Sequence record: MH383160.1
DNA: 64,000 nucleotides
Direction: 5' to 3' (one strand)
Shown: in pieces, positions 279-46,283 of the stretch
How positions within the stretch are numbered: position 1 is the first letter of the stretch
Layout of the letters: every line of letters begins with the position of its first letter
Notes under the pieces: model-generated
Databases searched by the model: none
Seen by the model: only the letters and a program-made list of their open reading frames with translations
What the model was told of the DNA's origin: nothing
Translations under genes and position numbers: made by a program

Positions 279-307
279 ATTATATCTCAAAAATGATGCT
301 TGTCTCA
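279..307 (-). promoter_or_regulatory. Putative middle-class promoter TGAGACA-N16-TATAAT
   Basis: Plus strand shows ATTATA at 279-284 and TGTCTCA at 301-307, 16 bp apart, upstream of the clamp-like gene. Confidence 0.65.
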
Positions 308-315
308 ATTTTTTA

Positions 316-615
316 TCAGTATTTTGTATTCCAACGATGAAGATAAGGCTTATCAATTGTAGAACTCATGCCAATTTTATCTCGTAATTTTTTCAAGTCT
401 TTTAATGTATGTACATCATCGACAAAAACAACTTTACGCTTTTTCACAAGAGTGTAAACATCAGCAATCTCTCCGTCAACTTCCACTGAACCAGTGCGAG
501 TAAAACCCGCACCAATTAGAACTACTTCTTCATCATTATCATATGCTAGTACAGAATTAATGATACCATTACCTTCTAATACTTCACCAATACGCTTATA
601 TATATTACTCATCAT
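316..615 (-). CDS. Hypothetical protein (99 aa)
   Basis: ORF co-oriented and tightly packed with its neighbours; no recognisable motif. Confidence 0.7.
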   Translation of the reverse strand: MMSNIYKRIGEVLEGNGIINSVLAYDNDEEVVLIGAGFTRTGSVEVDGEIADVYTLVKKRKVVFVDDVHTLKDLKKLRDKIGMSSTIDKPYLHRWNTKY

Positions 616-754
616 TTTTACCTTGTAATGAAGTCCATTCTACATATTTTTCCCATGCCTCATTTACACTTTCTTCAGTAAGATTCAACATCTCATTAGT
701 GAAAGTATCGTTTACTTCGTCATAGTTTAGTTCAATTTCATTTACAATAACCAT
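605..754 (-). CDS. Small acidic hypothetical protein (49 aa), absent from the ORF track
   Basis: ATG at 754 with AGGAGT RBS at 761-766, overlapping the polymerase stop. Translation MVIVNEIELNYDEVNDTFTNEMLNLTEESVNEAWEKYVEWTSLQGKNDE; its stop overlaps the start of the next ORF. Confidence 0.7.
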   Translation of the reverse strand: MVIVNEIELNYDEVNDTFTNEMLNLTEESVNEAWEKYVEWTSLQGKNDE

Positions 755-765
755 ATTATTACTCC

Positions 766-3700
766 TTACCAAGTGAAGAATCCATTGTTTACTGACGCAG
801 TACTTTTTTCATGAATACCAATATCCATATCCAAAATACCAAAAATATTCTCTAATTTTTTAGTTAGAACAATCTCTTCCATTTTTTCAGTATCAAATGG
901 TAGTTCCAAGAACCATTCTGGAAGATACTCAACACAGTCAATTGGATAACCAACAGCTTTAATTCCCATAGGATTATCTTTTAAGTTACAGACAATTACT
1001 TTTGTTCCATCTGTTACTTCTGGAACAGATTTATCATCATAAACTTCACGTAGACGGTTCCATTGGATACCAGCAAGAACGTGACCAACTTTACACTTAC
1101 CAGTTAGCTGATATTCAGCCTCTAAATTAGTGTAGTTTTTTACAGTTTTTGGTGAACCTTTTTCATGTACAGGCATATCCTTAAATACGTCCTTAAACTC
1201 ACGTACACGCTGTTTTAGCTGTTGTTCACTCTCACCTACCAGTAATGCGATTAGAGTCTCTTCTAGGAAGTTCTGGATGTATTTTGGCGTGTCTGAGCGT
1301 TTAATTTCAAGACCCATCGCTTTGATTTCACCTGGTTTACCATCAATATCTTTACGGAACCCATCTTCCCAGTACTTCAGAATTGCATAACGTTTTTTCT
1401 TCAAGAATAGGCCACGTGAACCAACCATCTCAAGGTCTGCACCAACAATCTTACCTTTTTCAATACCAGTGTTGAACATCTCATGCATAAATGATGGGAA
1501 AGATTCACCAACTTCTTCACCAATTTTAATATACATATCAACAATCTCTTCTTTAGATAGATTATATGGAATACCTTGTTCTTTCAGATAATGAGTTACA
1601 CTAAAGTAAACTGAGTCAGTATCACCATAAATTACTGAACCACCTTGGTGGTTATATACACCAGTAGTAATTTCATTGATACGACTTGCCATATGTTTGG
1701 TCATAGAACGTCCAGTTAATGTTACGGATTGACCTAAACGTTTGTCAAAAAAACGAGAACCTTTGTTCAATAGTGCACCATATAGACTGTTTAGAAGAAT
1801 CTTACGAATCTGTTGGTTCTGTTTCCAGAAAGCACTACGTTGTTTGAAGTAATCTTTTTCTTCTTTAGGACAGAAAATACGACCATCTTTTAGTACTAAT
1901 CCGTTTTCTACAATCAACTTAGCAACTTCATCCCACTGTCCTTTACCAATTTCTTTACGAAGTAAGTATACAGGATCATTATCATGAATATTAGTTCTAA
2001 ACATTGTACCAGGGGTATAGTTTGATAGTAGTGGTTCAACTTTTTCATAGCCATTAAACTCCCAACCATCAGTATACATATGTTTGTAGTCAATGACCAT
2101 TTTTTGCTGTGCTTTACGTTCAGAATACCATTGAGTTAGAATGTCAGGAATTACACCAGACTTAGACTTATCAAAAAGTGTTCCGTTTGCACTAAGTACA
2201 ATAGTACTATCTTCTGCAAAAATAATATCATATAGCTCTTTGCCCGTTGCTTTAAAAGAACTCCCATCTTCTAAATCAACAATCAATGTTTCTTCTGACT
2301 TTTCATGAACCATTGTAAATTCAACAGCAGCAAATAAACCATGCCATGCCGCAGTCCAATCTGGTTCAAATGATTTAGATTTAGATTTGTTCTTCTGTTC
2401 TTGGATTTTAGCTGCAAGATACGCATCGGTGTAATCTTGACGTAATTGACCAAGAATACATTCAGTACTCATACCCAAAGTACGTAGAACAGTAGGGTAA
2501 AGAGAGTTAAAGTCAGTACACCCAAGGTCACTTACAAGTCCTAGTACTGGATCTTGTACCCATGCACCTGCTGCTTTTGCACTAATTTTCTCATCTTCTT
2601 CTTCACCATCTTCACCATAATATTCCATTTCTGGATCAAACTCAAGATCATCTTTCGGTGCTTTGTTGAAAACAACTTCACCACGAGTATGTGCTAAGTT
2701 GATAATAGCAGTGTCGATTAGTGCTACTGAACCCATTGTTGTACTGATAAGTACACATTCTTTGTGTGCAAGTCGATTGTGTAGGTTGATATAGTCACAT
2801 TTAGCATCAATCTTTTTAAGAAGAATACTATCCTGTTTAGAATAACGCAAGAAAGTAATGTAATCCTCTCTGTAAAGTTTATCCAATGAACCTTCATAGG
2901 ATACTTTATTTTCTTTAGTTACTTTTTCAGCAATATAATCTAGTTTATAAGATTGTTCAACTTGACCAGCATGTTTCTTATACAAAGCCAAATAATCAAG
3001 ATGGACGCGACCTACCAGATCATATGTTTGAACAGTTTTACCAAAGTTGTCTGCTTCACGTGAATTTGGTTTTTTATTCCATAAACACCAACGAGCAGTT
3101 GTTGCTTCATTGAAGATTTTTTTAGTTCGATTGATCATATATGGAATATCAAAGAATTCACTATTCCATCCTGAAATAACATCAGAATCATCAATTAAAC
3201 TAAAGAATTCCATAAACATTTCCTTTTCGTCTGTATATAAAATTACAGTACTGTTAGGATCGTTTGTTTCTTCATTTAGTTGGCGAACAATATCTTGTGC
3301 TTCATAAATTTCCATATCAGCAGGTGGTAAAGTAAGTACATAATCCTTTCCAGTCCATGATTGATATAGAGAAATAGCGGTTACTCGGTTAAACGGGTCT
3401 GATGGTGGAGCATAACCAAATTTCTTATGGAAATCAGTCTCGATATCGAAGAACACGATGTTCAAATCGGGTGAGCCTTTTCCCATATATTCTTTAGCTA
3501 ATGTTTTAAATGTAATGTTACAATCACTTTCAAAAATACGTAGACCTTCACTTTTGTGTTGCTCTACACTTTTATTCATTTGAGCTTGAGTTTGAAACTC
3601 AAAATGTTTAGCCATTGTACCATAAACAGTTTTATGTGTTCCTTGTGGGGATTCAACATAATATTCAAATACTGGATCTAATTCGCGTAGAATACGTTTA

Positions 3701-3771
3701 CCATTCTTACGTTCAACTACATGAAGAATATCACCAGTACGTTTACGTTCCATATAAGCATCGATATACAT
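766..3771 (-). CDS. Family B DNA polymerase (T4 gp43-like) with 3'-5' exonuclease
   Basis: ExoI FFDIETD, ExoII GWNSEFFDIPY, ExoIII YSKQD; motif A DFNSLYP, motif B KILLNSLYG, motif C YGDTDS. No intein signature seen. Confidence 0.97.
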   Translation of the reverse strand: MYIDAYMERKRTGDILHVVERKNGKRILRELDPVFEYYVESPQGTHKTVYGTMAKHFEFQTQAQMNKSVEQHKSEGLRIFESDCNITFKTLAKEYMGKGSPDLNIVFFDIETDFHKKFGYAPPSDPFNRVTAISLYQSWTGKDYVLTLPPADMEIYEAQDIVRQLNEETNDPNSTVILYTDEKEMFMEFFSLIDDSDVISGWNSEFFDIPYMINRTKKIFNEATTARWCLWNKKPNSREADNFGKTVQTYDLVGRVHLDYLALYKKHAGQVEQSYKLDYIAEKVTKENKVSYEGSLDKLYREDYITFLRYSKQDSILLKKIDAKCDYINLHNRLAHKECVLISTTMGSVALIDTAIINLAHTRGEVVFNKAPKDDLEFDPEMEYYGEDGEEEDEKISAKAAGAWVQDPVLGLVSDLGCTDFNSLYPTVLRTLGMSTECILGQLRQDYTDAYLAAKIQEQKNKSKSKSFEPDWTAAWHGLFAAVEFTMVHEKSEETLIVDLEDGSSFKATGKELYDIIFAEDSTIVLSANGTLFDKSKSGVIPDILTQWYSERKAQQKMVIDYKHMYTDGWEFNGYEKVEPLLSNYTPGTMFRTNIHDNDPVYLLRKEIGKGQWDEVAKLIVENGLVLKDGRIFCPKEEKDYFKQRSAFWKQNQQIRKILLNSLYGALLNKGSRFFDKRLGQSVTLTGRSMTKHMASRINEITTGVYNHQGGSVIYGDTDSVYFSVTHYLKEQGIPYNLSKEEIVDMYIKIGEEVGESFPSFMHEMFNTGIEKGKIVGADLEMVGSRGLFLKKKRYAILKYWEDGFRKDIDGKPGEIKAMGLEIKRSDTPKYIQNFLEETLIALLVGESEQQLKQRVREFKDVFKDMPVHEKGSPKTVKNYTNLEAEYQLTGKCKVGHVLAGIQWNRLREVYDDKSVPEVTDGTKVIVCNLKDNPMGIKAVGYPIDCVEYLPEWFLELPFDTEKMEEIVLTKKLENIFGILDMDIGIHEKSTASVNNGFFTW

Positions 3772-3800
3772 CGTTTGTATTCCCTTACGTTTATTAAGTT

Positions 3801-3828
3801 AAAAAGAAAGCCTCCGTCATTGGAGGCT
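3801..3828 (-). terminator. Rho-independent terminator between the dsbA-like gene and the polymerase
   Basis: Stem AGCCTCC/GGAGGCT (3809-3815, 3822-3828) followed on the minus strand by TTCTTTTT. Confidence 0.75.
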
Positions 3829-3850
3829 ATTTAATATATTTTAGTACTAA

Positions 3851-4153
3851 TTAGTAATCATCTGCTTGTGGAAGATTATTAGTAACACTAAGAATAGTTT
3901 CGATATTATCGAGTTTATTTTGTTTGTCAAAGTAATCACCTTTGTACATACGTTGTGCAGCTTGTTTGATATCAGATGCATCGATACCAAGTTCATCAGA
4001 AACACTAGAAACAAAATCAGATAAGGATGCTTTGGTATCATCAATGAAAGTTAGTTGTACAACAATGTTGTTAAGTGCGTCACCGAGACGTTTACGTTGT
4101 TCATCGTTTAGATCACGAATTTCAACTTTAACTTCTTTTTTAGATTTAGCCAT
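3851..4153 (-). CDS. Small dsDNA-binding protein, T4 DsbA-like
   Basis: The likely start is MAKSKK at 4153 (GGAG RBS at 4163-4166). ELGIDASDIKQAAQRMYKGD resembles T4 DsbA ELGVDGKMFNRLLALYHKD as recalled; size is similar. Confidence 0.6.
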   Translation of the reverse strand: MAKSKKEVKVEIRDLNDEQRKRLGDALNNIVVQLTFIDDTKASLSDFVSSVSDELGIDASDIKQAAQRMYKGDYFDKQNKLDNIETILSVTNNLPQADDY

Positions 4154-4178
4154 TTTGTATTTCTCCATGTGTGTTTTC

Positions 4179-4214
4179 AAAAAAATGTCACCTCACCACA
4201 ATCGGTGAGATGAC
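4179..4214 (-). terminator. Terminator of the tail fibre/chaperone unit, overlapping the start site of the downstream promoter
   Basis: Hairpin GTCA-C-CTCACC / GGTGAG-A-TGAC (4187-4214) followed on the minus strand by a T run. Confidence 0.65.
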
Positions 4215-4217
4215 TTA

Positions 4218-4246
4218 ATTGTATCACGTCTTTACGTGTTGTCTCA
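4218..4246 (-). promoter_or_regulatory. Putative middle-class promoter TGAGACA-N16-TACAAT (extended -10 TGA)
   Basis: Plus strand shows ATTGTA at 4218-4223 and TGTCTCA at 4240-4246; upstream of the dsbA-like gene and the polymerase. Confidence 0.65.
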
Positions 4247-8272: not shown

Positions 8273-8301
8273 ATTATATACATTCCAGAACATTGTGTCA
8301 A
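8273..8301 (-). promoter_or_regulatory. Perfect sigma70 consensus promoter TTGACA-N17-TATAAT
   Basis: Plus strand shows ATTATA at 8273-8278 and TGTCAA at 8296-8301, 17 bp apart; points into the nuclease island. Confidence 0.85.
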
Positions 8302-9607: not shown

Positions 9608-9615
9608 TATTTATA
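9608..9615 (-). promoter_or_regulatory. T4-type late promoter TATAAATA (major capsid gene)
   Basis: Exact TATAAATA on the minus strand upstream of the capsid gene; a gp55 sigma is encoded in the window. Confidence 0.85.
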
Positions 9616-17901: not shown

Positions 17902-18120
17902 GGTTTTAAACTACAGAATTATTTGAATTGAATTATGAAAGGATTAATTTTAATATTATTGGATTCATCTAACTCATTTCATTCGTTAGCTGAAGAATAT
18001 TCGTTACTACGTAACTCATATTCATTTAATTAAATTAATTATAAAGAACTTTAAAAGATTTAATACTTGACGGGATTTGTTGAGGACATTTTCATCCCCC
18101 CGCAGGGGAATGAAGACAAT

Positions 18121-18143
18121 AAAAAAGAGACAATGAAGTCTCT
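18121..18143 (-). terminator. Terminator closing the candidate ncRNA
   Basis: Minus strand reads AGAGAC-TTCATT-GTCTCT-TTTTT. Confidence 0.7.
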
Positions 18144-18575
18144 ATTTCTTGACGCTGATGGTTTCAGCATTTATTGTATTGCGAATTTCTTAAAAATATA
18201 TTAAGAACGAAAGCGGGTTGCTCTGTTTCTCTCTATCGCAGTCATGTGCAACGGTCGTCAGTCTTAATCATCCTGACACTCACCTGAAAGTCTATACAAT
18301 CAAACTTCAGGCTGTTTATTAAAATCACTTAATAAACTCCCTTAGCAAATCTGGTAAGGTGCGATCCTTATATGTCTATCTAGGAACTCTCTGTATGCTT
18401 ATCGGAGTTCTTTATTGAGCCGCATTGCCGTGAGGGGTTCAAACTATGCCCACATCTAACGGGTTTCTTTTGCTCATCGCACTGTTGAACTGCTCATCTG
18501 CCATCTACATTTTCGATAGGATCAGGTTCTAATTTATATGCATTTCTGCATTCAACAGGATTGTCATTATTACAA
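18121..18575 (-). ncRNA. Candidate structured non-coding RNA of about 455 nt, family unknown
   Basis: No ORF of 60 aa or more. Promoter at 18581-18609, terminator at 18121-18143. About 38-40% GC by hand count against about 21% in the flank. At least nine hairpins, most with G-U wobbles on the minus strand. Confidence 0.6.
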
Positions 18576-18580: not shown

Positions 18581-18609
18581 ATTATAGCACAAACTTTAAA
18601 GTTGTCTCA
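18581..18609 (-). promoter_or_regulatory. Putative middle-class promoter TGAGACA-N16-TATAAT with extended -10 (TGC)
   Basis: Plus strand shows ATTATA at 18581-18586 and TGTCTCA at 18603-18609; points into the ORF-free structured region. Confidence 0.7.
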
Positions 18610-19210: not shown

Positions 19211-21358
19211 TTAGAAAACATCGTCAAGGGTTGCATATTCAACAGTACTGAAACCGTCCTCTTTAACAACTTTGAGGATTTTTTCAGTCTTAGATAGTAA
19301 CTCTTCTCTGTGGGAAATAGCATAAACGTTCTTACCACGTACAGCAGCCATATCTTGGAAGATAGACCACACACGTAGAACACCACTTGAGTCAAGACCT
19401 TGGTCAATCATCTCATCAATAATAAGAATATTAATACTTTGGTATAATGACTCATATGTATCACGGAAAGCACAAGATAATGCGATGTTTACCCTTGTAC
19501 GCTCACCTCTACTAAGCTGTTTATAGTCAAAGTACTGTCCACTCTTCTCAATTTCAACACTCAAATCATTCAAAAACACAACATTATGCTCAGAACCGCA
19601 CATATCGATATAGTACTGAAGTCGTGTATTCAAATATGAGATATTTTGCTCAATAATACGTTTACGGACATAAGAATCCTTGTTTAAAAGTAATTTAACC
19701 AAGAAATCTTGGTGATTTGACATTTTATCAAGATTATTATAGTCGCTATAATCGATTGGTACTAAAGAATCAGTCTTCAGGGTATTAATTTGGCTAATAA
19801 ATGTGTTAGTAGTCTTCAATTCACGATCTAATTGCTGTGATAATGAATTTACAGTCATTTCTAACTCTTTAACTTCATATTTGTTTAATGTATCTGGAAC
19901 TTCCATTAGTTCATATGAGTTAAGTTCATCATATGATGACATAAGTTCATTTGCATAGATGTTTATTTGTTCTTCTTCACTCTTTCTGACCAATTCTTGA
20001 AGCTTATGTTCATGCATTTGTGCTTCTGAAAGTGTATTATAATATGTCACAGGCTTAGGTGGCATATCAAAAATCTCAATACTATCAATTTCTTGAAGTA
20101 ATGTTTCAATTTCAGAAGAAGAACTATCAATTTTAGCTTGAAGATCATTAATAGAACTTTGGATTTTGTCTTTAATTGAAGAAGTATGTTCGTTATGTTC
20201 TAATTCAGACATACAAAGTGGACATTTGCTGTTTTCAACTGTTGATAATTTGTCAATTTCAGCATTAATTGAACATTCATATCCTTTTAAAGCTATTTTT
20301 AGTGAGTTTAGTTTTTGTTCTTTGAAACGTTTTTGGTTATTATTCTCTTTTAGAATACCCTCTAACTGTTTCCATATCTCCAACTCATTATGATTTTCCA
20401 ATTCTGCACTAATATCAATAGTTTTTAGCTTATCAATGCTTAGATTTAATGCTCTTTTAGATCTTTCAAGTTCACGGTCATATGCATCAAATTTTAAAGC
20501 CAACTCTTGTACACGGCGTTCGATTTCCCCACGCTTTGCGTTATGAATAAGAGCTTTCTCTTTTATATCAGCAGCTTCATAGAGGTCATTAAAGTCTAAA
20601 GTTTTATATATATTCAACTCTTCATTTAACTTAGATACTCTATTATTTTTATCAATTTCAAACTGGTTTGCCTGTTCTTGTAGTGTCTCAATACTTTTTT
20701 GAATACGTTCATTACTTGCAGCTACAGTTTCATTTTTGAACTTTTCTTGTTCGGCTAAACGTTTAGTATCCTTATACATCTCCTTTAGCATTTCAGCTTT
20801 TTCCGTCAACTGTGTTATTCCAAGAAGTTCTTCTATCATATCACGTTGTTTTTGTGTGGATAAAGCTAAGAAAGGTTCAACGTTAGCATTCAGTACTACA
20901 ATATGTTCAAATAATAATTGAGATATTCCAAGAATTTCATTCAAATCTTCTTGTGTGTCTTTCTTTTCCCCTCTTGATTCATCTTCAATTTTATTATCTT
21001 TCCCTAAAGTGATAAAATTGAAATACGTGGGACTTCTCCCACGTTCAACAAGATATTGTACACCATCTTTTTCAAATTCTACAACTACTTCACAATTTTT
21101 ACCATTAGTTTTATTGACTAAGTTAGGAATTTTAATATCATTACCAATACTTTTCCCAAATAATCCAAAAACTAATCCTTGAATAATAGCACTTTTCCCG
21201 ACACCATTTCGACGTCCGGTGCTGTCACCACCTTCAATAACTGCATCATTATTTTGACCCAGTACTAATGAAATGTCAGAACCATTCAATTCAATTGATT
21301 GTGGTGCATTACCAAATGAAAAGAAGTTCCTCATAGATATACGTGTAATGTTTAGCAT
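19211..21358 (-). CDS. Recombination exonuclease ATPase subunit (T4 gp46 / SbcC / Rad50-like)
   Basis: Walker A NGVGKS, CPLC zinc hook, signature LSRGE, Walker B IIDEMID, H-loop ISH. Confidence 0.93.
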   Translation of the reverse strand: MLNITRISMRNFFSFGNAPQSIELNGSDISLVLGQNNDAVIEGGDSTGRRNGVGKSAIIQGLVFGLFGKSIGNDIKIPNLVNKTNGKNCEVVVEFEKDGVQYLVERGRSPTYFNFITLGKDNKIEDESRGEKKDTQEDLNEILGISQLLFEHIVVLNANVEPFLALSTQKQRDMIEELLGITQLTEKAEMLKEMYKDTKRLAEQEKFKNETVAASNERIQKSIETLQEQANQFEIDKNNRVSKLNEELNIYKTLDFNDLYEAADIKEKALIHNAKRGEIERRVQELALKFDAYDRELERSKRALNLSIDKLKTIDISAELENHNELEIWKQLEGILKENNNQKRFKEQKLNSLKIALKGYECSINAEIDKLSTVENSKCPLCMSELEHNEHTSSIKDKIQSSINDLQAKIDSSSSEIETLLQEIDSIEIFDMPPKPVTYYNTLSEAQMHEHKLQELVRKSEEEQINIYANELMSSYDELNSYELMEVPDTLNKYEVKELEMTVNSLSQQLDRELKTTNTFISQINTLKTDSLVPIDYSDYNNLDKMSNHQDFLVKLLLNKDSYVRKRIIEQNISYLNTRLQYYIDMCGSEHNVVFLNDLSVEIEKSGQYFDYKQLSRGERTRVNIALSCAFRDTYESLYQSINILIIDEMIDQGLDSSGVLRVWSIFQDMAAVRGKNVYAISHREELLSKTEKILKVVKEDGFSTVEYATLDDVF

Positions 21359-21366
21359 ATAGTCCC

Positions 21367-22398
21367 TTATAACGATCTGTAAATTTGGATTAGAAGATTT
21401 TTATCAAACATTGGTGAGTCAATTTCCATAATTTGCTGCAACACAATCTCATCAACTGATTCAGTACTTTCAAAACTAACACCATCTTCAATTAATTCTG
21501 CAATACTTTGCTTGCTCGTTACAACATTAAACTCTCTAATGTTATAAAGTTTAGTAAATGTATCACGAATAAAACTAATCTCATCTGTTGTTATTGATAT
21601 ATCAACTTGAACTTTTGATATTGTATTATCTTGAAGATAATAACCAGGATCAGTTAACAATTCTGAAAGTGTAAATGTTCTATATTTTGGTGCATGTTCC
21701 CATGATTTGAAAATAGGTTCTTTACCATGTTCAAGGATCATTACACCTCTTGCATCATCCCATGTATCAGAAAAATTATGTGGGAAACAATTACCAGTAT
21801 AAACTACGCGAGTTCCTTTGGATGTTGTTTTTGATTGTCTTTTATGAAAGTGCCCACTAAAAACATACTCACAACCACCAAAAGAACCTTCTGTTTCTTT
21901 TCCATGATCTGGCATTTCTACCATCTTATTAAGCAAGTACCCTGGTAATTCTAAGTGTCCAAAAACATACTTACTTTTTAGTTGAGGTAATAGTTTATAT
22001 TCATCTTCAATCATAAATGGAATGAAAGTACAATCATCAAATGTTGTGATTTCATTAATGAACTCTATATTTTCATAGACTTGAGCCATATTGATACTTG
22101 TTATATCACGTTTGTTTTTGTGATACATATCATGGTTACCAACAAGAAAATATACTTTTTCGAAATTATCATTTAGAAGTTGAAGAATTTGTAAACCATA
22201 GTTTAGTGTTTGAATGTTGATATTACTTCTATTATGAAAATAATCTCCCATAAAAACACAAACTTTGATATTATTCTTTTTTGCCTCATCGATCATAAAT
22301 TTAATGAAGTTTAAACAGTCTTCATTGTGTTGCTTACTGTTATTCTTTAAACCTAAATGAATATCAGTGAATGTAATTGCTTTATCAAACAGAGCCAT
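21367..22398 (-). CDS. Recombination exonuclease nuclease subunit (T4 gp47 / SbcD / Mre11-like)
   Basis: Metallophosphoesterase motifs TDIHLG, MGDYFH, VGNHD, GHLE and SGHFH; likely start MALFDK. Confidence 0.93.
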   Translation of the reverse strand: MALFDKAITFTDIHLGLKNNSKQHNEDCLNFIKFMIDEAKKNNIKVCVFMGDYFHNRSNINIQTLNYGLQILQLLNDNFEKVYFLVGNHDMYHKNKRDITSINMAQVYENIEFINEITTFDDCTFIPFMIEDEYKLLPQLKSKYVFGHLELPGYLLNKMVEMPDHGKETEGSFGGCEYVFSGHFHKRQSKTTSKGTRVVYTGNCFPHNFSDTWDDARGVMILEHGKEPIFKSWEHAPKYRTFTLSELLTDPGYYLQDNTISKVQVDISITTDEISFIRDTFTKLYNIREFNVVTSKQSIAELIEDGVSFESTESVDEIVLQQIMEIDSPMFDKNLLIQIYRSL

Positions 22399-23224
22399 CT
22401 TCGTTTTTCCTTTCAATCATGTTCAATTCAATTTCAATTTGACGTGTATGTGATGGTGTAAAGCCATGCATTTCAAGTAAATCATCACGTATATTTCGAA
22501 CATTTTTCTCACTATTCAAAATAGAACGAAAACTATTGTTGACAAATGATGTATAGTAAGAGAAAGGATTTAACTGTACTGCTGGTTTATCTTTTTTATA
22601 AAGAATACTCTCTTTAAAGAGAAGTGCATTTTTAACTAATTGTATTCTTGCATCACCCATCATTTCATCTAAGTATGTATAGTTTCGATAATTAGATTTA
22701 TGTGAGATTTCCTCTGCAAGTTTAATGAACATCTTCCCAAGTTCATTTGTAATTTTACCGTGAACAGTACTGAATTCGCCAGTTTCAAGGTCGCCTTTCC
22801 AGTGAGAACGGCAAACTTCATAGAGAATACCTTCATTATCCACAATATAATGCTTGAATGGTTCAAAATTCACTCTAGTATCTGGTGGAATATGTTCATC
22901 AGTAATAACACGAATAACAACTTCATCAATTGGAACGTCAGTGATAACTAAATTGTGTTCATCTGCATATTCTTTAGCTTTTTTAGCACTCATATTTTCC
23001 TTTTCACGAATACTATCAAGCATTTCATTGTTTAGTCGTTTAATTCGTGCTGCCTTAGCTTTTTCTAGTAACTCAGCAGTAATTTCTGACTCATGAAAAA
23101 CAATATAATCATACATACTATATGATTTGTCTAATAACCAGCAATATGAAATTTTACTTTTTTGTATTTCACGAAGTAAATCAGCATTATTGAGATACTT
23201 TTTACGCTTTGGTCTATTTGTCAT
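22385..23224 (-). CDS. Late transcription sigma factor (T4 gp55-like)
   Basis: YLNNADLLREI, LGKMFIKLAE, NYRNYTYLDEMMGD and NPFSYYTSFVNNSF; TATAAATA late promoters occur throughout the window. Confidence 0.88.
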   Translation of the reverse strand: MTNRPKRKKYLNNADLLREIQKSKISYCWLLDKSYSMYDYIVFHESEITAELLEKAKAARIKRLNNEMLDSIREKENMSAKKAKEYADEHNLVITDVPIDEVVIRVITDEHIPPDTRVNFEPFKHYIVDNEGILYEVCRSHWKGDLETGEFSTVHGKITNELGKMFIKLAEEISHKSNYRNYTYLDEMMGDARIQLVKNALLFKESILYKKDKPAVQLNPFSYYTSFVNNSFRSILNSEKNVRNIRDDLLEMHGFTPSHTRQIEIELNMIERKNEDGSV

Positions 23225-23281
23225 TGTATTTTACTCTCCATGTTTAAATCCAATAGGTACAATCCTTGTACCATCAATGTT

Positions 23282-23310
23282 ATTATAGCACCAAAAAGCA
23301 GTTTGTCCCA
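23282..23310 (-). promoter_or_regulatory. Putative middle-class promoter TGGGACA-N16-TATAAT (gp55-47-46 operon)
   Basis: Plus strand shows ATTATA at 23282-23287 and TGTCCCA at 23304-23310; back-to-back with a late promoter at 23313-23320. Confidence 0.7.
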
Positions 23311-23312
23311 CG

Positions 23313-23320
23313 TATAAATA
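23313..23320 (+). promoter_or_regulatory. Late promoter TATAAATA (baseplate operon)
   Basis: Exact match upstream of ATG 23356. Confidence 0.8.
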
Positions 23321-23355
23321 CATCAAATGTTCCCTTATTATGGAGAATCAAAAAG

Positions 23356-24087: not shown

Positions 24088-24401
24088 TGTCCAACTATAG
24101 TCAATACTCACCTTATGCTAAGGTGAAACAAACATGGTATCTTGGGTATAATTTACCACGTGATATTGTTCCGGCTGATACTGATGATTTTTATGAAATT
24201 CCATTGAAATATGAATATCAACCTTGGCGTTTAGCATACGAAATGTATGGCAATGAACGCTTATATTATATCTTTGCATTGTTAAATCCAGATATACTAG
24301 GAGAAGATCCTATATATAATTTCAAAAGTGGAGTAACAATTAGAATACCAGCAAATCAAAGAGTACAAAACTATCTTAATGGTACTCGAAACATAGGCTA
24401 A
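24087..24401 (+). CDS. Baseplate wedge protein, LysM-like (gp53-like)
   Basis: YEYQPWRLAYEMYGNERLYYIFALLNP...GVTIRIP. Confidence 0.75.
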   Translation: MSNYSQYSPYAKVKQTWYLGYNLPRDIVPADTDDFYEIPLKYEYQPWRLAYEMYGNERLYYIFALLNPDILGEDPIYNFKSGVTIRIPANQRVQNYLNGTRNIG

Positions 24402-24412
24402 TGGAGTAACGT

Positions 24413-26662: not shown

Positions 26663-26675
26663 GGAATAAAATATT

Positions 26676-29339
26676 ATGGCAGATACAAGTAAAAAGTATG
26701 CACAACAGCAGTTGGGTCGTTTTGACCCATCTTATCCCCAGTTAGCAACTGTTATGGATAACAGAGATCCAACTAAATCAGGAAAACTGAAAGTTTGGAT
26801 ACAAGGTTCTCAAAGTGATAAAAACTCAAAAGAATCATGGATAGAAGCATCTTACATGTCTCCTTTTGCTGGTAAAACACCAGGTATTCCAAGTGCTGAT
26901 GCATATGGTCAATATCCAAAAGGATACGGTTTTTGGGCAGTACCACCAGACGTAGGGTGTACAGTTGTTGTAATTTTTGCACAAGCCCGTACATTCCAAG
27001 CATATTGGATTGGTTGTGTATATGACCAGCGTATGAATACTATGGTTCCAGGTATGGCAACTGAAGTAAGTAATTATGGTGGAACTGATATGCCACTTCC
27101 TGTTACTGACTATGATCGTAACACTATCACTACCGATATGCAAGACAAATATGCTAACGTTCCAATTATCGCAGGTCTTAAAAAGCAAAACCTTTTATAT
27201 GACGAAGAAGCTGGGTTGGCGAATCGTAGTAGTACTCGACAAACCACCAGTACTGTATATGGTATGTCTTCGCCACGTGGTAATAGTTTTATTATTGATG
27301 ATGGATATACTGAAGAGGAATTAACAGCACCAACGTGGGATCAAGACCCAGATGGATATCAAGATACACAATTTAATAACCCAGTAAACGATACACGTGT
27401 TGGTTCTCGTAAAAATGAAGGTGTCGTAATAAAAACACGTAGTGGTGCACAACTTCTTTTATCAGAAGCTACTGGTGATGTTCTTTTAATTAACCGTGAT
27501 GGCACTGCACGTATAAAATTCACTGGTGAAGGTGATATTGACATGCACTGTGATAAGAATATTAATATTCGTGCTGGTCAAGATATTAATATTACTGCTG
27601 GACGTTCATATAATATTGAAACCGGACAAGATTTCAATGCACGAGTTGGTGCAAATACTAAATTAGATCTAATTGGTGCTCTTGATGCAAAAGTTGGTGG
27701 ACAAGTTGTTGTTAATTCTGGGGCAGACCTTCGTTTAGTTACTGCTGCATCATTACGTATGCAAAGTGGTAGCAGTACTGATATTACGGCTGGTTCAAAT
27801 GCTTCTATTTCTGCCGCAACATCTGCAAACCTAATTGGATCATCATCAGCAATTATTAGTGGTGGTGGTCAAACATTAACAGTTAATAGTGGTGGTAATA
27901 GCGGTACTGCTGAATTTACTGCACCAAACTTTAGAACACCATCTGCTGGTCTTAATGAACACATTCATGATATTGCTGCATGGGTTAACGCTGAAAATCA
28001 TGGTAGTTATGTTGAACCACCAAGACAAGGTGGTGGAAGTGGTTCTAGTGAATCACCAGTACAACCACAACCAGCAAATGATGTATCACCAGAATTACCC
28101 GTAGCACAAGACACTGAAGCTGTTCAGTTTGTTAACTATACATCAGAAACTGAACAAGTTCAATCACAAGATTTGATGACATCTGATCCTGGGATGACTG
28201 GATATAGTATTACATATGAAGGTTTACATATGTTAATGCCATGTAGCGGTACTATTCGACAATATGGTTACTGGGGGAAAGGTGTTCCAACACAAAGTGG
28301 AGGAAAGGCAGACCGTTCAGGTTGGGAAATACAATGTAAAGGTGATGTAGTTGCACCAGATGGTGGTGTGGTAGTAATTACTAATGGTGCTCTTTTAATA
28401 CAACATAAGTCTGGATATAAATCTATTTTTTATAATATTCAATCTGATTTATTAAACAAAGATGTTGTTCAAAAAGGTCAAGTTGTTGGAAAAGCAAATG
28501 GTGTCATACAGTTTGAAATTCGTGTTACATCAGCAAATGTTCTTGGATTCAGTGGTTCTGTTGACCCAGGATTATTTTATGCTTCACAAACAGGAACAGG
28601 GTCTGATGCGGCGAATAAAACATTAATTGGTGGTCAAGCAACTAATCAATCTGCTCCAAAAGCAGTTGTACAACCTTCAGTTGATAGTGATGAATTGGTA
28701 GTTACAACAAAAATCAAAACGATAGGTACTGGATATTCTCAACGTGGTTCTCGTCATGTGCCTCGTAGGAGAAGAACACAGAGAAGTGGAGCTTCAACAA
28801 CTCCGGTGGAGCAACCTACCTATAATATTGGAAATGTTGATAAAACTGCAATCGATTGGAAAGTTGTTCCAGGTGATGCACAATTTATTTCTGAATTAAA
28901 AGAATATGAAGGTACATTACAATACCAACAAGCAAAAGGATATTATCGTAATGGTAAATTCTGGCGTTATTTGGATAGTCGTGGGTATCCAACTATTGGT
29001 TATGGTCACTTGATTATTAGTGGTGAAAACTTTTCAGATGGAATAACTGAACAGCAAGCCAACGATATGTTAGTTCGTGATAGTAGTAAAGCTATATATG
29101 ATGCTAAATCAATTTATGCTTCATACAACATGAAAACACCTTATTTGGCTCAACAAGTACTATGCCAAATGGTATTCCAGATGGGTAAAGGTGGGGTACT
29201 TAAATTTAAAACTATGTTGTCTGAATTAGCTAAAGGTAATTATAAACAAGCTGCTGCTCAAATACGTAATTCAGCTTGGTATCGCCAAACTACTCGCCGT
29301 GCTGAGTTAATGGCTCGTCGTTTAGAGGCATGTCAATAA
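26676..29339 (+). CDS. Baseplate central spike (gp5-like): OB fold, beta-helix, HxH tip, degenerate M23-like domain, C-terminal T4-type lysozyme
   Basis: ATVMDNRDPTKSGKLKVW; WAVPPDVG; beta-helix repeats; HIH at 27960-27968; M23-like region at about 28233-28523; KEYEG...YLDSRGYPTIGYGHL. Confidence 0.85.
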   Translation: MADTSKKYAQQQLGRFDPSYPQLATVMDNRDPTKSGKLKVWIQGSQSDKNSKESWIEASYMSPFAGKTPGIPSADAYGQYPKGYGFWAVPPDVGCTVVVIFAQARTFQAYWIGCVYDQRMNTMVPGMATEVSNYGGTDMPLPVTDYDRNTITTDMQDKYANVPIIAGLKKQNLLYDEEAGLANRSSTRQTTSTVYGMSSPRGNSFIIDDGYTEEELTAPTWDQDPDGYQDTQFNNPVNDTRVGSRKNEGVVIKTRSGAQLLLSEATGDVLLINRDGTARIKFTGEGDIDMHCDKNINIRAGQDINITAGRSYNIETGQDFNARVGANTKLDLIGALDAKVGGQVVVNSGADLRLVTAASLRMQSGSSTDITAGSNASISAATSANLIGSSSAIISGGGQTLTVNSGGNSGTAEFTAPNFRTPSAGLNEHIHDIAAWVNAENHGSYVEPPRQGGGSGSSESPVQPQPANDVSPELPVAQDTEAVQFVNYTSETEQVQSQDLMTSDPGMTGYSITYEGLHMLMPCSGTIRQYGYWGKGVPTQSGGKADRSGWEIQCKGDVVAPDGGVVVITNGALLIQHKSGYKSIFYNIQSDLLNKDVVQKGQVVGKANGVIQFEIRVTSANVLGFSGSVDPGLFYASQTGTGSDAANKTLIGGQATNQSAPKAVVQPSVDSDELVVTTKIKTIGTGYSQRGSRHVPRRRRTQRSGASTTPVEQPTYNIGNVDKTAIDWKVVPGDAQFISELKEYEGTLQYQQAKGYYRNGKFWRYLDSRGYPTIGYGHLIISGENFSDGITEQQANDMLVRDSSKAIYDAKSIYASYNMKTPYLAQQVLCQMVFQMGKGGVLKFKTMLSELAKGNYKQAAAQIRNSAWYRQTTRRAELMARRLEACQ

Positions 29340-43889: not shown

Positions 43890-43890
43890 T

Positions 43891-43928
43891 AAAAAAGGAG
43901 AGCATTATGCTCTCCTTTTCTTTTTTTT
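43891..43928. terminator. Bidirectional terminator
   Basis: A run, AGGAGAGC-ATTAT-GCTCTCCT, long T run, between converging genes. Confidence 0.85.
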
Positions 43929-46215
43929 ATACTAGTGCTTTATCTACAGCTTTGGTACGTTTCGGCTTAATACCGATTTTACCATCAATAACATCAAATG
44001 TAATGTTACCACCATTCACAAGTGAACCACACAACATTTCTTTAGCTAGTGGCACACGAATGTTTTGTTCAATGGTACGTTTCATTGGACGTGCACCCAT
44101 ACCAACTTTTACCCCATTTTTCGCAAGCCATTCACGTGCAGCTTTTGTCAATGTAACTTTAACATTACGGTCTTTGACTTGTTCATTCAAACCACCCATG
44201 AACTTATCAATGATGCTGTCAATAGCTTCACTGCTTAGGTCTTTAAACGTAACGATACTATCAATACGGTTAATAAACTCTGGTGGCAAGAATGCTTTAA
44301 TTGCCTTGTCCTGTGCAGTGTCACTACCGCTCATACCAATGCTACGCTTTGTTGAATCAGCCGCACCAAGGTTTGTAGTCATAATAACAGTTACGTTATT
44401 AAAATATACAGTTTTACCTTGAGAACCAGTCAGACGACCTTCATCCAAAACCTGTAGGAAGGTTAGTAGTACTTTACGATCTGCTTTTTCAATTTCATCA
44501 AGTAACAGTACTGCATTAGGGAACTGCTCAATTTTATCCAACAGTAAACCGTTACCAGAATCATGACCAACATAACCTGGAGGTGAACCAATTAGTTTAG
44601 AAACAGTATGTTCTTGTGAAAATTCTGACATATCAAAGCGAATGAGTTCCGCACCAGTTGCGTCTGCTAATGCTTTGGTAATTTCTGTTTTACCAGTACC
44701 AGATGGTCCAACAAACATAAATGCACCCTGAACACTAGATTTGTCACGCAGTCCTGCACGAGCTACCATCACGTTATCAACTAATTTTTGAATAGCTTCC
44801 TCTTGACCGTATACACGTGAGCGTAGTGCATCTGGTAGATTACGCATACGATCACTTTCAGTACATGCAACCACGTTGATATCCAAATTGGCAATACCAG
44901 CAACAACTTCTTGAATCAAATTGGCAGTAATAAGCTTACTATTGTTGTCACGTGAACGAACTTTAGCCGCAGCAGCATCCATTAGATCAATTGCTTTATC
45001 TGGGAAGTGCTTATTCTTCAGGAATTTATCACTGAGAGAAATTACAGCATCCATTGCATCAGATGTGAACTCAACATTATGGAATTTTTCATACGTTGGT
45101 TTCAAACCATTAACAATTGCACGAGTTTCATCAATTGTCGGCTCAACTACGTCAATTTTCATAAAACGACGAGTTAATGCACTATCTTTCTCGATATTTT
45201 TACGATATTCATCATATGTTGTTGCACCAATTACACGAATCTCACCACGTGAAAGTGCTGGCTTAAGCATATTGCTCATGTCCATAGAACCATTACTTGC
45301 GGAACCAGCCCCAACCATAATATGAATTTCATCAATGAAAACAATAGTATTTTCACGTTTCTTTAGTTCTTTTAGCAAATTGTCGATGCGTTCTTCAAAT
45401 TCACCACGATACTTAGTACCAGCAGTCAATGCACCAACATTTAGTGAAAGAATTTCAACGTCTTTCAGGTGTTCAGGTACGTTACCATCAGCAATAGCTT
45501 GTGCAAGCCCGTCGATGATTTGTGTTTTACCTACACCAGCTTCACCAGTGAGAATAGCATTCTTTTTGGTTTTGCGAGCAAGAGTCTCAATCAATGCAGA
45601 CAATTCTTTCTGGCGACCAATCATAGGATCTAGTTTGCCTTCTTTTGCAAGAGCAGTTAGATTCGTTGTATAGTCTTCCAAACCTTTTTGTTTAGATGAT
45701 TGCTGCTGTTGGGCCACTTTTTTATCTCCAATCGGTTCGTCATTAATACTTTGTAAGTTGATACCCTTATCAAGTGACTCAACGTGTTTCTGTAATGCAC
45801 GTGCAGCTTCAGTACAGCTAACACCTTCTTCTTTTAACGCAGCTTCTAGTGCTGTGTTAGGGAAAGACAGACATTCGAATAGAACAAAATATGCATCAAT
45901 CGAAAAATCATCACTTTTTAGTTGTTCAATAACTGATTTTTTAGAAAGCTCATGTACAACGCGATTCACTAGAAGTGAAGTGCGATTCGCGTCTTCATCT
46001 TTAACACTTTTTGGTGCATGTGGAACTGTTGTATTTTTAAGATAGTTCATCAGTCGGTTGTGCAGTTTGTCTGCATCAATGTTCATATCTTCAAATACGT
46101 TCTTGATGCTATCAATAGTCAGTACTGTGGCACTTACGTGGTCAATAGTCAAGAATGTATGACCTAGAGATGTTGCCAGTTCGTCGCTTTTTTTGAACAA
46201 TTGAGTAAGATTCAT
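43927..46215 (-). CDS. clpA: ClpA-like Hsp100 AAA+ unfoldase
   Basis: Clp N-domain GHTFLTIDH; D1 Walker A GEAGVGKT and Walker B FIDEIH; D2 [32 protein letters not shown]; no ClpB middle coiled coil; KRSIGM at the IGF/L loop position. Likely start MNLTQ at 46215. Confidence 0.88.
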
Positions 46216-46255
46216 GTATTCTCCTATGTGATTCACGTCACTCTAATTAATAAAC

Positions 46256-46283
46256 ATTATATCACATTCTTACGGTTTGTCTA
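46256..46283 (-). promoter_or_regulatory. Promoter TAGACA-N16-TATAAT with extended -10 (TGA), upstream of clpA
   Basis: Plus strand shows ATTATA at 46256-46261 and TGTCTA at 46278-46283. Confidence 0.7.

What the first reader, a model, noticed from the sequence alone, without database searches (positions are those of the whole stretch)
279..46283. A distinct promoter class, (TG)RGACA-N16-TAyAAT, marks the genes that are middle-class in T4
Seen in the sequence: five minus-strand elements share GACA exactly 16 bp from a sigma70-type -10 box. They are TGAGACA at 279-307 (clamp), TGAGACA at 4218-4246 (dsbA-like/polymerase), TGAGACA at 18581-18609 (ncRNA candidate), TGGGACA at 23282-23310 (gp55-47-46) and GTAGACA at 46256-46284 (clpA). 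Four of the five also have an extended -10 (GTG-A/C-TAyAAT). They differ from the canonical TTGACA-N17-TATAAT at 8273 and from the TATAAATA late boxes. Established knowledge: T4 genes 45, dsbA, 55, 47 and 46 are transcribed from MotA/AsiA middle promoters with a different -30 box. Inference: this is a MotA-box-independent middle promoter, possibly read with an unidentified phage activator or modified RNA polymerase.
Basis: partly seen in the sequence, partly recalled or inferred. Interest (0 to 1): 0.65.

Follow-up and report, generated by a model that had tools for sequence, protein, structure and literature searches.

The report
Pre-late promoter class of a jumbo coliphage
The five sites are real promoters of a second class that jumbo coliphage UB and its relatives place before replication genes, the late sigma gene and a repeated RNA; the class was already noted in two relatives, and it is probably read by the phage's own sigma factor rather than by a T4-style MotA activator.

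Summary
The window is bases 1-64000 of Escherichia phage UB, a 353 kb Rak2-like jumbo phage of the genus Asteriusvirus. All five elements are at the stated coordinates, and four of the five have a TGn extended -10.

They belong to a genome-wide class B of about 20-27 sites, TG(A/G)GACA-N16-TGn-TAYAAT, all on the gene strand. Class B sits before gp55-47-46, the polymerase, primase, topoisomerase, td, exonuclease and UvsX regions, and four copies of a structured RNA.

Class B is separate from about 50 canonical class A promoters (TTGACA or TTGCAw, no TGn), which cluster among small early genes. It is also separate from the TATAAATA late boxes.

The same architecture was published as a "divergent RpoD-like promoter" in phages GAP32 and CBB. 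At orthologous genes the -35 word changes with the phage lineage:
- UB, A4, fEgEco12 and 7t3: TGRGACA
- RaK2: TTGAACA
- GAP32, CBB and XbC2: TGRAACR

TTGACA promoters occur in all four genomes analysed in full.

MotA and AsiA are absent. A phage sigma-70-family gene lies behind class A promoters and is found in all seven relatives examined. Residues of its -35-reading helix track the word.

Best reading (about 0.5): a pre-late, "middle" class read by host core polymerase with the phage sigma. Timing and reader are inferred, not shown.

The parts
279..307 (-). Class B promoter: TGAGACA-N16-TATAAT, without a TGn extended -10. An inverted repeat flanks the -10.
   Evidence: Orthologous sites carrying each lineage's own word lie before the same ORF in RaK2, 7t3 and CBB.
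1..214 (-). First 71 codons of a 243-aa ORF that continues at the end of the record (353081 down to 352564).
   Evidence: The frame is open across the record junction. It matches PHROG 12062, unknown function, and no Pfam family. The fold had pLDDT 35.
4218..4246 (-). Class B promoter: TGAGACA-N16-(GTGA)TACAAT. A hairpin plus T-run follows at about +1.
   Evidence: The hairpin and promoter are kept in RaK2, 7t3 and CBB.
766..4153 (-). A 100-aa dsbA-like gene (3851-4153) and the DNA polymerase gene (766-3771), downstream of the 4218-4246 promoter.
   Evidence: Annotation. PHROG 639, transcriptional regulator, E=1.3e-7.
8273..8301 (-). Class A comparison site: canonical TTGACA-N17-TATAAT.
18581..18609 (-). 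Class B promoter: TGAGACA-N16-(GTGC)TATAAT.
18048..18565 (-). One of four copies of a structured non-coding RNA of about 520 nt. It begins about 16 nt after the -10.
   Evidence: nhmmer E=3.6e-145. 76 predicted pairs, 42 with compensatory changes. No tRNA or Rfam match.
23282..23310 (-). Class B promoter: TGGGACA-N16-(GTGC)TATAAT. It lies back to back with a plus-strand late box at 23313-23320.
   Evidence: Orthologous sites lie before gp55 in RaK2, 7t3 and CBB.
19211..23224 (-). The gp55 (late sigma), gp47 and gp46 operon. The 23282-23310 promoter is its only visible promoter.
   Evidence: Annotation. PHROG 12791, late sigma, E=3e-154. The upstream neighbour is on the opposite strand.
46256..46284 (-). 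Class B variant: GTAGACA-N16-(GTGA)TATAAT.
   Evidence: The orthologous site has TTGGGACA in 7t3, TGGAACG in CBB and TTGACA in RaK2.
43927..46215 (-). ClpA-like ATPase gene served by the 46256-46284 promoter.
   Evidence: Annotation. PHROG 4871, ATP-dependent protease.
9608..9615 (-). Late box TATAAATA before the major capsid gene. Five more lie at 10817(-), 16775(+), 18663(+), 23313(+) and 29352(+).
   Evidence: together with the annotation.

Best explanation
The five sites belong to a genome-wide class of real promoters (class B). Its architecture is an A/T-rich upstream tract, TG(A/G)GACA, 16 bp, and TGn-TAYAAT. Class B drives the pre-late genes of phage UB: the late sigma gp55 with gp47 and gp46, replication, recombination and nucleotide-metabolism genes, a ClpA-like ATPase, and four copies of a structured RNA.

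The class is homologous to the 'divergent RpoD-like promoters' of GAP32 and CBB.

Proposed mechanism:
1. Host sigma-70 holoenzyme first reads the canonical class A promoters (TTGACA or TTGCAw) of the early region.
2. That region encodes a 321-aa phage sigma-70-family protein with regions 2, 3 and 4.
3. This protein, on host core polymerase, reads class B. Its diverged region 4.2 helix recognises the TGRGACA word.
4. Class B then supplies gp55 for the TATAAATA late promoters.

This would be a three-sigma cascade in place of T4's AsiA/MotA sigma appropriation.

Shown: the class, its placement, its homology across lineages, the absence of MotA and AsiA, and the presence and position of the sigma gene. 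Inferred: the timing, and the phage sigma as reader.
For: The class is real and distinct.
- 16 strict sites lie on the gene strand against 0 for the reversed control. With near-variants the count is about 27.
- TG at -15/-14 occurs in 88% of class B sites and 10% of class A sites.
- Class A is dense at 191-213 kb among small genes. Class B lies elsewhere, before annotated replication and metabolism genes.

The sites behave as promoters.
- The conserved RNA element begins 7-16 nt after the -10 in 4 of 4 UB copies and 5 of 5 CBB copies.
- gp55 and the ClpA-like gene have no other promoter.

The word drifts with the phage, not the host.
- Thirteen orthologous genes carry the word of their own lineage.
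- Counts of word plus spacer plus TAYAAT: UB TGRGACA 13 at N16; 7t3 TGRGACA 27 at N17; RaK2 TTGAACR 17 at N16-17; CBB TGRAACR 33 at N16. No genome has the word of another lineage, apart from five TGRAACR sites in UB, two TTGAACR sites in CBB and a few off-spacing TGRAACR matches in RaK2.
- TTGACA at N16-18 is present in all four genomes.
- XbC2, which infects Xanthomonas, keeps the word of its lineage.

The candidate reader fits.
- No AsiA or MotA.
- The phage protein matches Pfam Sigma70 regions 2, 3 and 4 (region 3 above the curated cut-off, regions 2 and 4 just below it) and RpoD in the PDB at E=5e-17.
- tblastn finds homologues in 125 phage records, including all seven relatives examined.
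- Its gene lies behind the TTGACA-N17 promoters at 262123, 262444 and 263806.
- Helix residues follow the word: R..S.H in UB, A4, fEgEco12 and 7t3 (TGRGACA), K..T.S in GAP32, CBB and XbC2 (TGRAACR), and R..T.HY in RaK2.
- The 7t3 sigma is nearer to the CBB lineage in regions 2-3 (57% against 39% identity) yet shares both helix residues and word with UB.
- PA5oct has gp55 but no detectable RpoD-like sigma, and its gp55 has a canonical TTGACT-N17-TAAAAT promoter.
- No fourth orphan motif turns up in the UB intergenic gaps, so three classes match three sigmas.
- There is a precedent in phiEco32 and 7-11: related phage sigmas read dissimilar promoters at conserved genome positions (PMC8948821).
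Against: - There are no expression or start-site data. The public RNA runs held only contigs.
- The -10 is a perfect sigma-70-type TGnTATAAT in every lineage, yet the phage sigma's regions 2.3-2.4 are strongly diverged. The Trp-Trp pair of primary sigmas is replaced by SS or TT, and these regions differ between lineages. A constant -10 would fit host sigma-70 reading it.
- The UB word keeps 4 of 6 matches to TTGACA, and the RaK2 word TTGAAC is close to consensus. Sigma-70 with an extended -10 could therefore use these sites.
- The base at -13 is UB-like in 7t3 although 7t3's sigma regions 2-3 resemble the CBB lineage.
- The covariation rests on only four word-and-helix lineages, and on an alignment to E. 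coli residue numbers recalled from memory.
- T4 early promoters (my own knowledge) show that a conserved non-consensus -35 can still be read by host sigma-70.
Confidence: 0.5

Rival explanations
1. Class B promoters are ordinary host sigma-70 extended -10 promoters. The partial -35 word only tunes strength. Alternatively, the extended -10 keeps them active after a phage factor blocks transcription that depends on the -35, so they are delayed-early without any new specificity factor.
For: The -10 is a perfect TGnTATAAT. The spacer is 16-17 bp. The UB word matches TTGACA at 4 of 6 positions, and the RaK2 word is TTGAAC. Extended -10 promoters need little -35 contact, and T4 early promoters carry a conserved deviant -35 read by sigma-70 (both from my own knowledge).
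Against: A dispensable -35 should drift at random. Instead a 7-nt word is nearly invariant within each genome and switches as a block between lineages whose hosts share sigma-70. The CBB word GAAACG matches TTGACA at only 1-2 positions yet is the best conserved, with 33-36 sites. This reading leaves the widely conserved phage sigma without a promoter class.
Confidence: 0.28
2. This is sigma appropriation without MotA. Host sigma-70 reads the -10, and an unidentified phage DNA-binding activator reads the TGRGACA word, perhaps together with a protein that remodels sigma region 4.
For: The -10 is constant across lineages while the upstream word changes, as expected if only the upstream reader is phage-encoded. 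GAP32, CBB and XbC2 have a small HTH gene two genes upstream of the sigma gene.
Against: There is no MotA or AsiA homologue. The word sits exactly where sigma region 4 binds, 16-17 bp from the -10, not at the 11-13 bp of a MotA box. No candidate activator is conserved next to the sigma gene in UB, A4, fEgEco12 or RaK2. The helix-and-word covariation points to the sigma.
Confidence: 0.17
3. The matches are chance or are not promoters, for example terminator-associated or recombination signals.
For: Several sites follow terminator hairpins with T-runs, and some carry inverted repeats.
Against: Seven matches against 0.81 expected, and 16 against 0 for the control. The sites are on one strand only, lie in intergenic gaps facing genes, recur at orthologous positions in four lineages, and the conserved RNA 5' boundary lies at the expected start.
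Confidence: 0.02

Closest known systems
'Divergent RpoD-like promoter' (MEME 'Promoter 1', TGAAACG-N16-TATAAT) of Cronobacter phage GAP32 and Pectobacterium phage CBB (Buttimer et al. 2017, PMC5259590)
   Same: The 29-nt architecture is the same: a 7-nt word, 16 bp, TATAAT, with TGn before the -10. The gene sets are the same (DNA synthesis genes and gp55). The sites occupy orthologous positions.
   Different: The word is TG(A/G)GACA in UB and TG(A/G)AAC(G/A) in CBB. The base at -13 is A or C in UB and mostly G in CBB. The paper lists 18 sites, while a strict scan finds 36 in CBB. The paper did not link the motif to the phage sigma or report the drift between lineages. I found no promoter analysis of Asteriusvirus in the searchable literature.
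T4 MotA/AsiA-dependent middle promoters
   Same: Both have a sigma-70-type -10 and a non-canonical upstream element, and both sit before replication, recombination and late-sigma genes. Both act between host-type early promoters and gp55-dependent late promoters.
   Different: A MotA box is TGCTT-centred at about -30, 11-13 bp from the -10 (my own knowledge). Here a GACA word lies 16 bp from the -10. The motA and asiA genes are absent.
Promoters read by phage-encoded sigma-70-family factors (phiEco32 gp36, Salmonella phage 7-11 gp47, Bacillus phage SPO1 gp28)
   Same: A phage sigma on host core polymerase would take over after sigma-70-dependent early transcription. Related phages carry different promoter words at conserved genome positions (PMC8948821).
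   Different: Those promoters do not have a sigma-70-type TATAAT. For example, the 7-11 consensus is GTAAtg-N16-aCTA. Their sigmas have been tested biochemically, and the UB sigma has not.
Extended -10 (TGnTATAAT) sigma-70 promoters of E. coli
   Same: TGn lies directly before a consensus -10 in 88-100% of class B sites in UB, 7t3 and CBB.
   Different: Class B also has a strictly conserved, lineage-specific 7-nt word at -35. RaK2 class B sites mostly lack the TG.

Membership tests
Sigma-70-type -35/-10 promoter | -10 hexamer close to TATAAT | tested here: met
   All five sites have TATAAT or TACAAT.
Sigma-70-type -35/-10 promoter | -35 hexamer close to TTGACA, 16-18 bp upstream | tested here: inconclusive
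   The spacer is 16 bp. The hexamers GAGACA, GGGACA and TAGACA match at 4 of 6 positions and lack the TT.
Extended -10 promoter | TG at -15/-14 | tested here: met
   Present in 4 of the 5 window sites and 88% of the 16 strict UB sites, against 10% of class A sites.
T4 MotA-dependent middle promoter | MotA box (TGCTT core) centred near -30, 11-13 bp from the -10 | tested here: not met
   None of the five sites has TGCTT in that position. The conserved word is GACA, 16 bp from the -10.
T4 MotA-dependent middle promoter | The genome encodes MotA and AsiA | tested here: not met
   PF09114 and PF09010 give no match at E<=1 in the whole 353 kb record.
T4-type late promoter | TATAAATA at -10 with no -35 element | tested here: not met
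   The five sites have TATAAT or TACAAT. The six TATAAATA boxes lie elsewhere, before structural genes.
Rak2-like 'divergent RpoD-like' promoter (GAP32/CBB Promoter 1) | 7-nt word, N16, TATAAT, with TGn before the -10 | tested here: met
   The published 29-nt sites of CBB Table S6 and the UB sites have the same layout.
Rak2-like 'divergent RpoD-like' promoter (GAP32/CBB Promoter 1) | Located before DNA-synthesis genes and gp55, at orthologous positions | tested here: met
   This holds for all thirteen orthologous genes compared in UB and CBB, and for most of them in RaK2 and 7t3.
Rak2-like 'divergent RpoD-like' promoter (GAP32/CBB Promoter 1) | Word TGAAACG | tested here: not met
   UB uses TGRGACA. 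Only five UB sites have TGRAACR. This is a lineage variant of the word, not a different architecture.
Promoter dependent on a phage-encoded sigma | The phage encodes a sigma-70-family protein with regions 2-4 | tested here: met
   Pfam Sigma70 r2, r3 and r4 (r3 above the curated cut-off, r2 and r4 just below it). PDB RpoD E=5e-17. Homologues in all seven relatives examined.
Promoter dependent on a phage-encoded sigma | Holoenzyme with the phage sigma initiates at the motif | not testable with these tools
   This needs in vitro transcription.
Middle (delayed) temporal class | Transcripts appear after early and before late transcripts, and depend on phage protein synthesis | not testable with these tools
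   The public runs held only contigs from wastewater samples. Pre-late timing is inferred from gp55 depending on this promoter alone.

The most novel reading that the evidence does not exclude
Rak2-like jumbo phages run a three-sigma cascade: host sigma-70, then a phage RpoD-like sigma, then gp55. In this reading the middle promoter's -35 word and three residues of the phage sigma's region 4.2 helix have co-evolved (R..S.H with TGRGACA; K..T.S with TGRAACR). This would be a natural set of orthogonal sigma and promoter pairs that all work on enterobacterial core polymerase. The same promoters also drive a conserved, multi-copy structured RNA of about 520 nt and unknown function.
Probability: 0.45. 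Interest if true: 0.65.

Novelty: new member of a known kind. Interest (0 to 1): 0.5.

Why it matters
Rak2-like phages are T4 relatives of about 350 kb whose transcription programme has never been mapped. This work gives a three-class promoter map (A, B and late) for one of them.

It shows that the second class is shared across the six related lineages compared, and that its -35 word follows the phage lineage rather than the host.

It names a specific, testable reader. If the phage sigma reads class B, these phages solved the early-to-middle switch with their own sigma rather than T4's AsiA/MotA sigma appropriation. The lineage-specific word and helix pairs would then be ready-made orthogonal parts for use in E. 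coli.

The map also improves annotation: it marks operon starts, four unannotated RNA genes, and a gene split across the record ends.

Tried and rejected
- **Whole genome file.** No G000 is held. I rebuilt the genome from the GenBank record in eight pieces; its first 64 kb are identical to the window.
- **RNA evidence.** The only holders were Logan contigs of wastewater metatranscriptomes and one probable DNA run. They gave no starts, strands or timing.
This gives no verdict.
- **Clamp identity of the first gene.** PHROG unknown function, no Pfam match, and a single-sequence AlphaFold model at pLDDT 35. The model was too poor for a fold search, so none was run.
- **RaK2 first seemed to lack the class**, with 0 hits. 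Its class B word is TTGAACA, mostly without the TG that my pattern required.
- **A natural sigma-less relative.** A paper says Ecwhy_1 lacks the sigma, but its DNA holds the gene at 98.9% identity. This is an annotation artefact.
- **PA5oct ncRNA001 and ncRNA002** as homologues of the UB RNA family: no nhmmer match.
- **tRNA or a known RNA family at 17.8-18.75 kb:** none on the minus strand.
- **A fourth promoter-like motif** that could be the phage sigma's true target: none found among 7-mers enriched in the intergenic gaps.
- **The RaK2 genome paper** mentions neither promoters nor sigma.
Full report
**What the window is.** An 8 kb stretch of the window (20000-28000) is 100% identical to the same coordinates of Escherichia phage UB (MH383160.1). 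UB is 353,081 bp, belongs to the genus Asteriusvirus, and is a Rak2-like jumbo myovirus related to 121Q and PBECO4. No whole genome was held for the window. I therefore fetched the record in eight pieces with its annotation. Its first 64 kb equal the window exactly.

**The observation.** All five elements are at the stated coordinates on the minus strand.
- Each has exactly 16 bp between GACA and TAYAAT.
- Four have TGn directly before the -10. The site at 279-307 has AGA there.
- GACA-N16-TAYAAT occurs 7 times in the window against 0.81 expected, and none of 100 shuffles reached 7.
- The two extra plus-strand hits, at 18275 and 46656, face no gene and look like chance.
- The canonical TTGACA-N17-TATAAT at 8273-8301 is real.
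- All six TATAAATA boxes lie 20-50 nt before starts of capsid, scaffold, baseplate, endonuclease VII, structural and lysozyme genes.

**Genome-wide picture.**
- GACA-N16-TAYAAT occurs 44 times in UB, 41 of them on the minus strand, which carries nearly all genes. N15 gives 0 hits and N17 gives 20.
- Upstream of all 1,327 TAYAAT words, the most enriched positioned 5-mers are GGGAC and GAGAC, about 40-fold enriched. TTGAC and CTTGC follow.
- Of 121 G[AG]GACA words, 16 have a perfect TAYAAT exactly 16 bp downstream, all on the minus strand. Near-variants (TGGACA, GAGACG, GGAACA, TAGACA) raise this to about 27.

Two classes separate cleanly.
- **Class A** has about 50 sites with TTGACA or TTGCAw at N16-17. 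TG at -15/-14 occurs in only 10% of them. About 30 nearly identical copies are packed at 191-213 kb among small hypothetical genes, and others lie at 241-300 kb.
- **Class B** has TG[AG]GACA at N16, and TG at -15/-14 in 88% of sites. The base at -13 is A or C and never G.

Outside the window, class B sites lie before these genes:
- the td operon (69053) and nudix/glutaredoxin (88066)
- a protease (133619)
- topoisomerase II (311738)
- an exonuclease (328065)
- primase (334460)
- the UvsX region (344490 and 344566)

A 7-mer enrichment scan of the intergenic gaps shows no fourth motif. It recovers only terminator T-runs, ribosome-binding sites, the late box and the two -10 contexts.

**The genes served in the window.**
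- gp55 is confirmed (PHROG 12791, E=3e-154). It forms an operon with gp47 and gp46.
- The 100-aa gene before the polymerase matches a 'transcriptional regulator' PHROG, which is compatible with dsbA-like.
- The ClpA-like gene is an ATP-dependent protease ATPase.
- The 'clamp' is a 243-aa ORF that runs across the record ends. It matches only a PHROG of unknown function and no Pfam family. Its single-sequence model had pLDDT 35, so this label is unverified.

The gp55 and ClpA-like operons each have an opposite-strand gene as upstream neighbour. The class B site is therefore their only visible promoter, and class B must fire before gp55-dependent late transcription. This is inference; no timing data exist.

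**Relatives.** I used a pattern that fixes only TG..AC in the -35 zone plus TGnTAYAAT, with the reversed pattern as control. The control gave 0 hits in every genome except one in RaK2.

| Phage | Sites | Word |
|---|---|---|
| UB | 16 | mostly TGRGACA |
| A4 | 15 | mostly TGRGACA |
| fEgEco12 | 16 | mostly TGRGACA |
| 7t3 | 4 | TGGGACA in 3 of the 4 |
| RaK2 | 0 | none |
| GAP32 | 35 | nearly all TGRAAC(G/A) |
| CBB | 36 | nearly all TGRAAC(G/A) |
| XbC2 | 34 | all TGRAAC(G/A) |

In each genome all sites lie on one strand.

I then fetched the whole RaK2, 7t3 and CBB genomes. Positional enrichment and word counts gave the following:
- 7t3 uses TTGGGACA, mostly at N17, with 27 sites.
- RaK2 uses TTGAACA at N16-17, with 17 sites, mostly without the TG.
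- CBB uses TGRAACR at N16, with 33 sites.
- TTGACA at N16-18 is present in all four genomes.

Thirteen orthologous genes were compared: gp55, the dsbA-like gene, ClpA, the td operon, nudix, a protease, orf148024, orf248185, topoisomerase II, the exonuclease, primase, the UvsX region and the clamp-like ORF. Where the orthologue has such a promoter, it carries the word of its own lineage at the same place. These are homologous promoters. Their -35 word changes with the phage lineage, although the hosts (E. coli, Salmonella, Klebsiella, Cronobacter, Pectobacterium and even Xanthomonas) have the same sigma-70 specificity as far as I know.

**Prior art.** Buttimer et al. 2017 (PMC5259590) describe three promoter types in CBB.
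- RpoD-like promoters with UP elements, concentrated in a presumed early region that encodes an RpoD-like sigma.
- A second promoter with a classic -10 but -35 TGAAACG, 'also identified in GAP32'. It has 18 sites, mostly before DNA-synthesis genes, with one before gp55.
- An ATAAATA late motif.

Their Table S6 sites have exactly the 29-nt layout found here. The class is therefore known bioinformatically in Mimasvirus. I found no promoter analysis for Asteriusvirus, RaK2 or fEgEco12. Reviews say only that jumbo phages without their own polymerase encode sigma homologues that 'likely' direct phage-specific promoters.

**Who reads the word?**

*MotA and AsiA are absent.* Their Pfam families find nothing in the 353 kb record.

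*UB encodes a sigma-70-family protein.* It is 321 aa and lies at 259884-260849.
- It matches Pfam regions 2, 3 and 4 (region 3 above the curated cut-off, regions 2 and 4 just below it) and RpoD structures at E=5e-17.
- Its gene lies downstream of the canonical TTGACA-N17 promoters at 262123, 262444 and 263806.
- Homologues are found in the seven relatives examined, at 99% to 31% identity. Ecwhy_1, reported to lack it, has it at 98.9% DNA identity.

*The recognition helix differs from RpoD.* The HMMER alignment to RpoD fades just before the region 4.2 recognition helix. The phage proteins have a 7-8 residue insertion there and a different helix.

*Helix residues follow the word.* Three helix positions separate the word groups.

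| Phages | Helix | Word |
|---|---|---|
| UB, A4, fEgEco12, 7t3 | R..S.H | TGRGACA |
| GAP32, CBB, XbC2 | K..T.S | TGRAACR |
| RaK2 | R..T.HY | TTGAACA |

This is not merely phylogeny. The 7t3 sigma is closer to the CBB lineage in regions 2-3 (57% against 39% identity), yet it shares both the helix residues and the word with UB. By alignment to E. coli sigma-70 numbering recalled from memory (a lead, not a test), the H/S position corresponds to R588. That residue contacts the G of TTG, which is the base that differs between the two words (G in UB, A in CBB).

*A sigma-less relative has a canonical promoter.* PA5oct is a more distant member of the clade. It has gp55 but no detectable RpoD-like sigma. 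Its gp55 is preceded by a canonical TTGACT-N17-TAAAAT. This fits the TTGAC and TATAATA promoters reported from its RNA-seq.

*Precedent.* phiEco32 and 7-11 are a biochemically proven case. Related phage sigmas read dissimilar promoters that sit at conserved genome positions.

**Weighing.** That class B is a real, separate, pre-late promoter class homologous to the GAP32/CBB motif I hold at about 0.9. That the phage sigma reads it I hold at about 0.5. The points against the sigma are these:
- The -10 is a perfect sigma-70-type TGnTATAAT in every lineage, while the phage sigma's regions 2.3-2.4 are diverged and differ between lineages.
- UB's word keeps 4 of 6 matches to TTGACA, and RaK2's word is close to consensus.
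- The base at -13 in 7t3 does not follow its sigma's regions 2-3.
- There are only four word-and-helix lineages.
- No expression data exist.

Chance is excluded.

**What failed.** Public RNA runs held only contigs of wastewater metatranscriptomes and gave no starts or timing. The clamp-like fold was too poor to search.

**Seen in passing.** The 'ncRNA candidate' is one of four paralogous copies of a conserved element of about 520 nt in UB. The copies are at 18048-18565, 98546-99125, 154320-154841 and 259326-259813, the last directly after the sigma gene.
- CBB has 5 copies, 7t3 has 5, and RaK2 has 3-4.
- Each UB and CBB copy begins 7-16 nt after the -10 of a class B promoter. This independently supports the predicted start sites.
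- RNAalifold predicts 76 pairs, 42 with compensatory changes.
- There is no tRNA or Rfam match on the minus strand.
- There is no detectable homology to the expressed PA5oct ncRNAs.

Noticed in passing
window 18048-18565 (-). Also UB genome 98546-99125, 154320-154841 and 259326-259813 (loci L003, L004, L006).: A conserved non-coding element of about 520 nt occurs in 4 copies in UB, 5 in CBB, 5 in 7t3 and 3-4 in RaK2. Each UB and CBB copy starts just after a class B promoter. RNAalifold predicts 76 pairs, 42 with compensatory changes. There is no Rfam or tRNA match, and none of the copies is annotated in the UB record. One copy sits directly after the phage sigma gene, also in A4 and fEgEco12. 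It looks like an undescribed structured RNA family of Rak2-like phages.
   Followed up: partly
window 1-214 (-), joined to the record end 352564-353081: A 243-aa ORF (PHROG 12062, unknown function) is split by the arbitrary start of the linear record and is not annotated in MH383160.1. The frame is open across the junction, so the record is a circular permutation.
   Followed up: partly
window 260-300 (-), and the orthologous sites in RaK2, 7t3 and CBB: An 8-11 bp inverted repeat brackets the -10 of the promoter before the 243-aa ORF. One arm lies in the spacer right after the -35 word and the other right after the -10. The arm sequences differ in the four lineages but stay complementary. Its function is unknown. 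It could be an operator, or an RNA hairpin in read-through transcripts.
   Followed up: no
window 4175-4212 (-): A GC-rich hairpin followed by a T-run begins at about +1 of the class B promoter before the dsbA-like gene. It is kept in RaK2, 7t3 and CBB, and in RaK2 and 7t3 a TATAA(A)T-like late box follows it. It could be the terminator of the upstream operon, an attenuator, or a 5' stabiliser.
   Followed up: no
window 23235-23275 (-): The gp55 5' leader holds a hairpin (GGTACA...TGTACC in UB). Hairpins occur at the same place in 7t3, CBB and RaK2, and their arms differ in sequence.
   Followed up: no
UB genome 191-213 kb (locus L005): About 30 nearly identical early promoters lie in roughly 22 kb of very small ORFs. 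Their form is aaaaagtac-TTGCAw or TTGACA, 16 bp, (aCTG or GCG)TATAAT, then gttttacat. The TG lies one base closer to the -10 than in an extended -10.
   Followed up: partly
window 18100-18360, in other strains: Contigs from a probable DNA run and a wastewater RNA run skip 60-112 bp segments inside the RNA element, for example 18114 to 18207 and 18239 to 18352. Relatives therefore carry indel variants of optional stems.
   Followed up: no
Literature: Ecwhy_1 (MH791411.1) 165-4130: A 2026 paper lists the sigma factor as absent from phage Ecwhy_1, but its DNA matches the fEgEco12 sigma region at 98.9% over the full length. The absence is an annotation artefact.
   Followed up: yes
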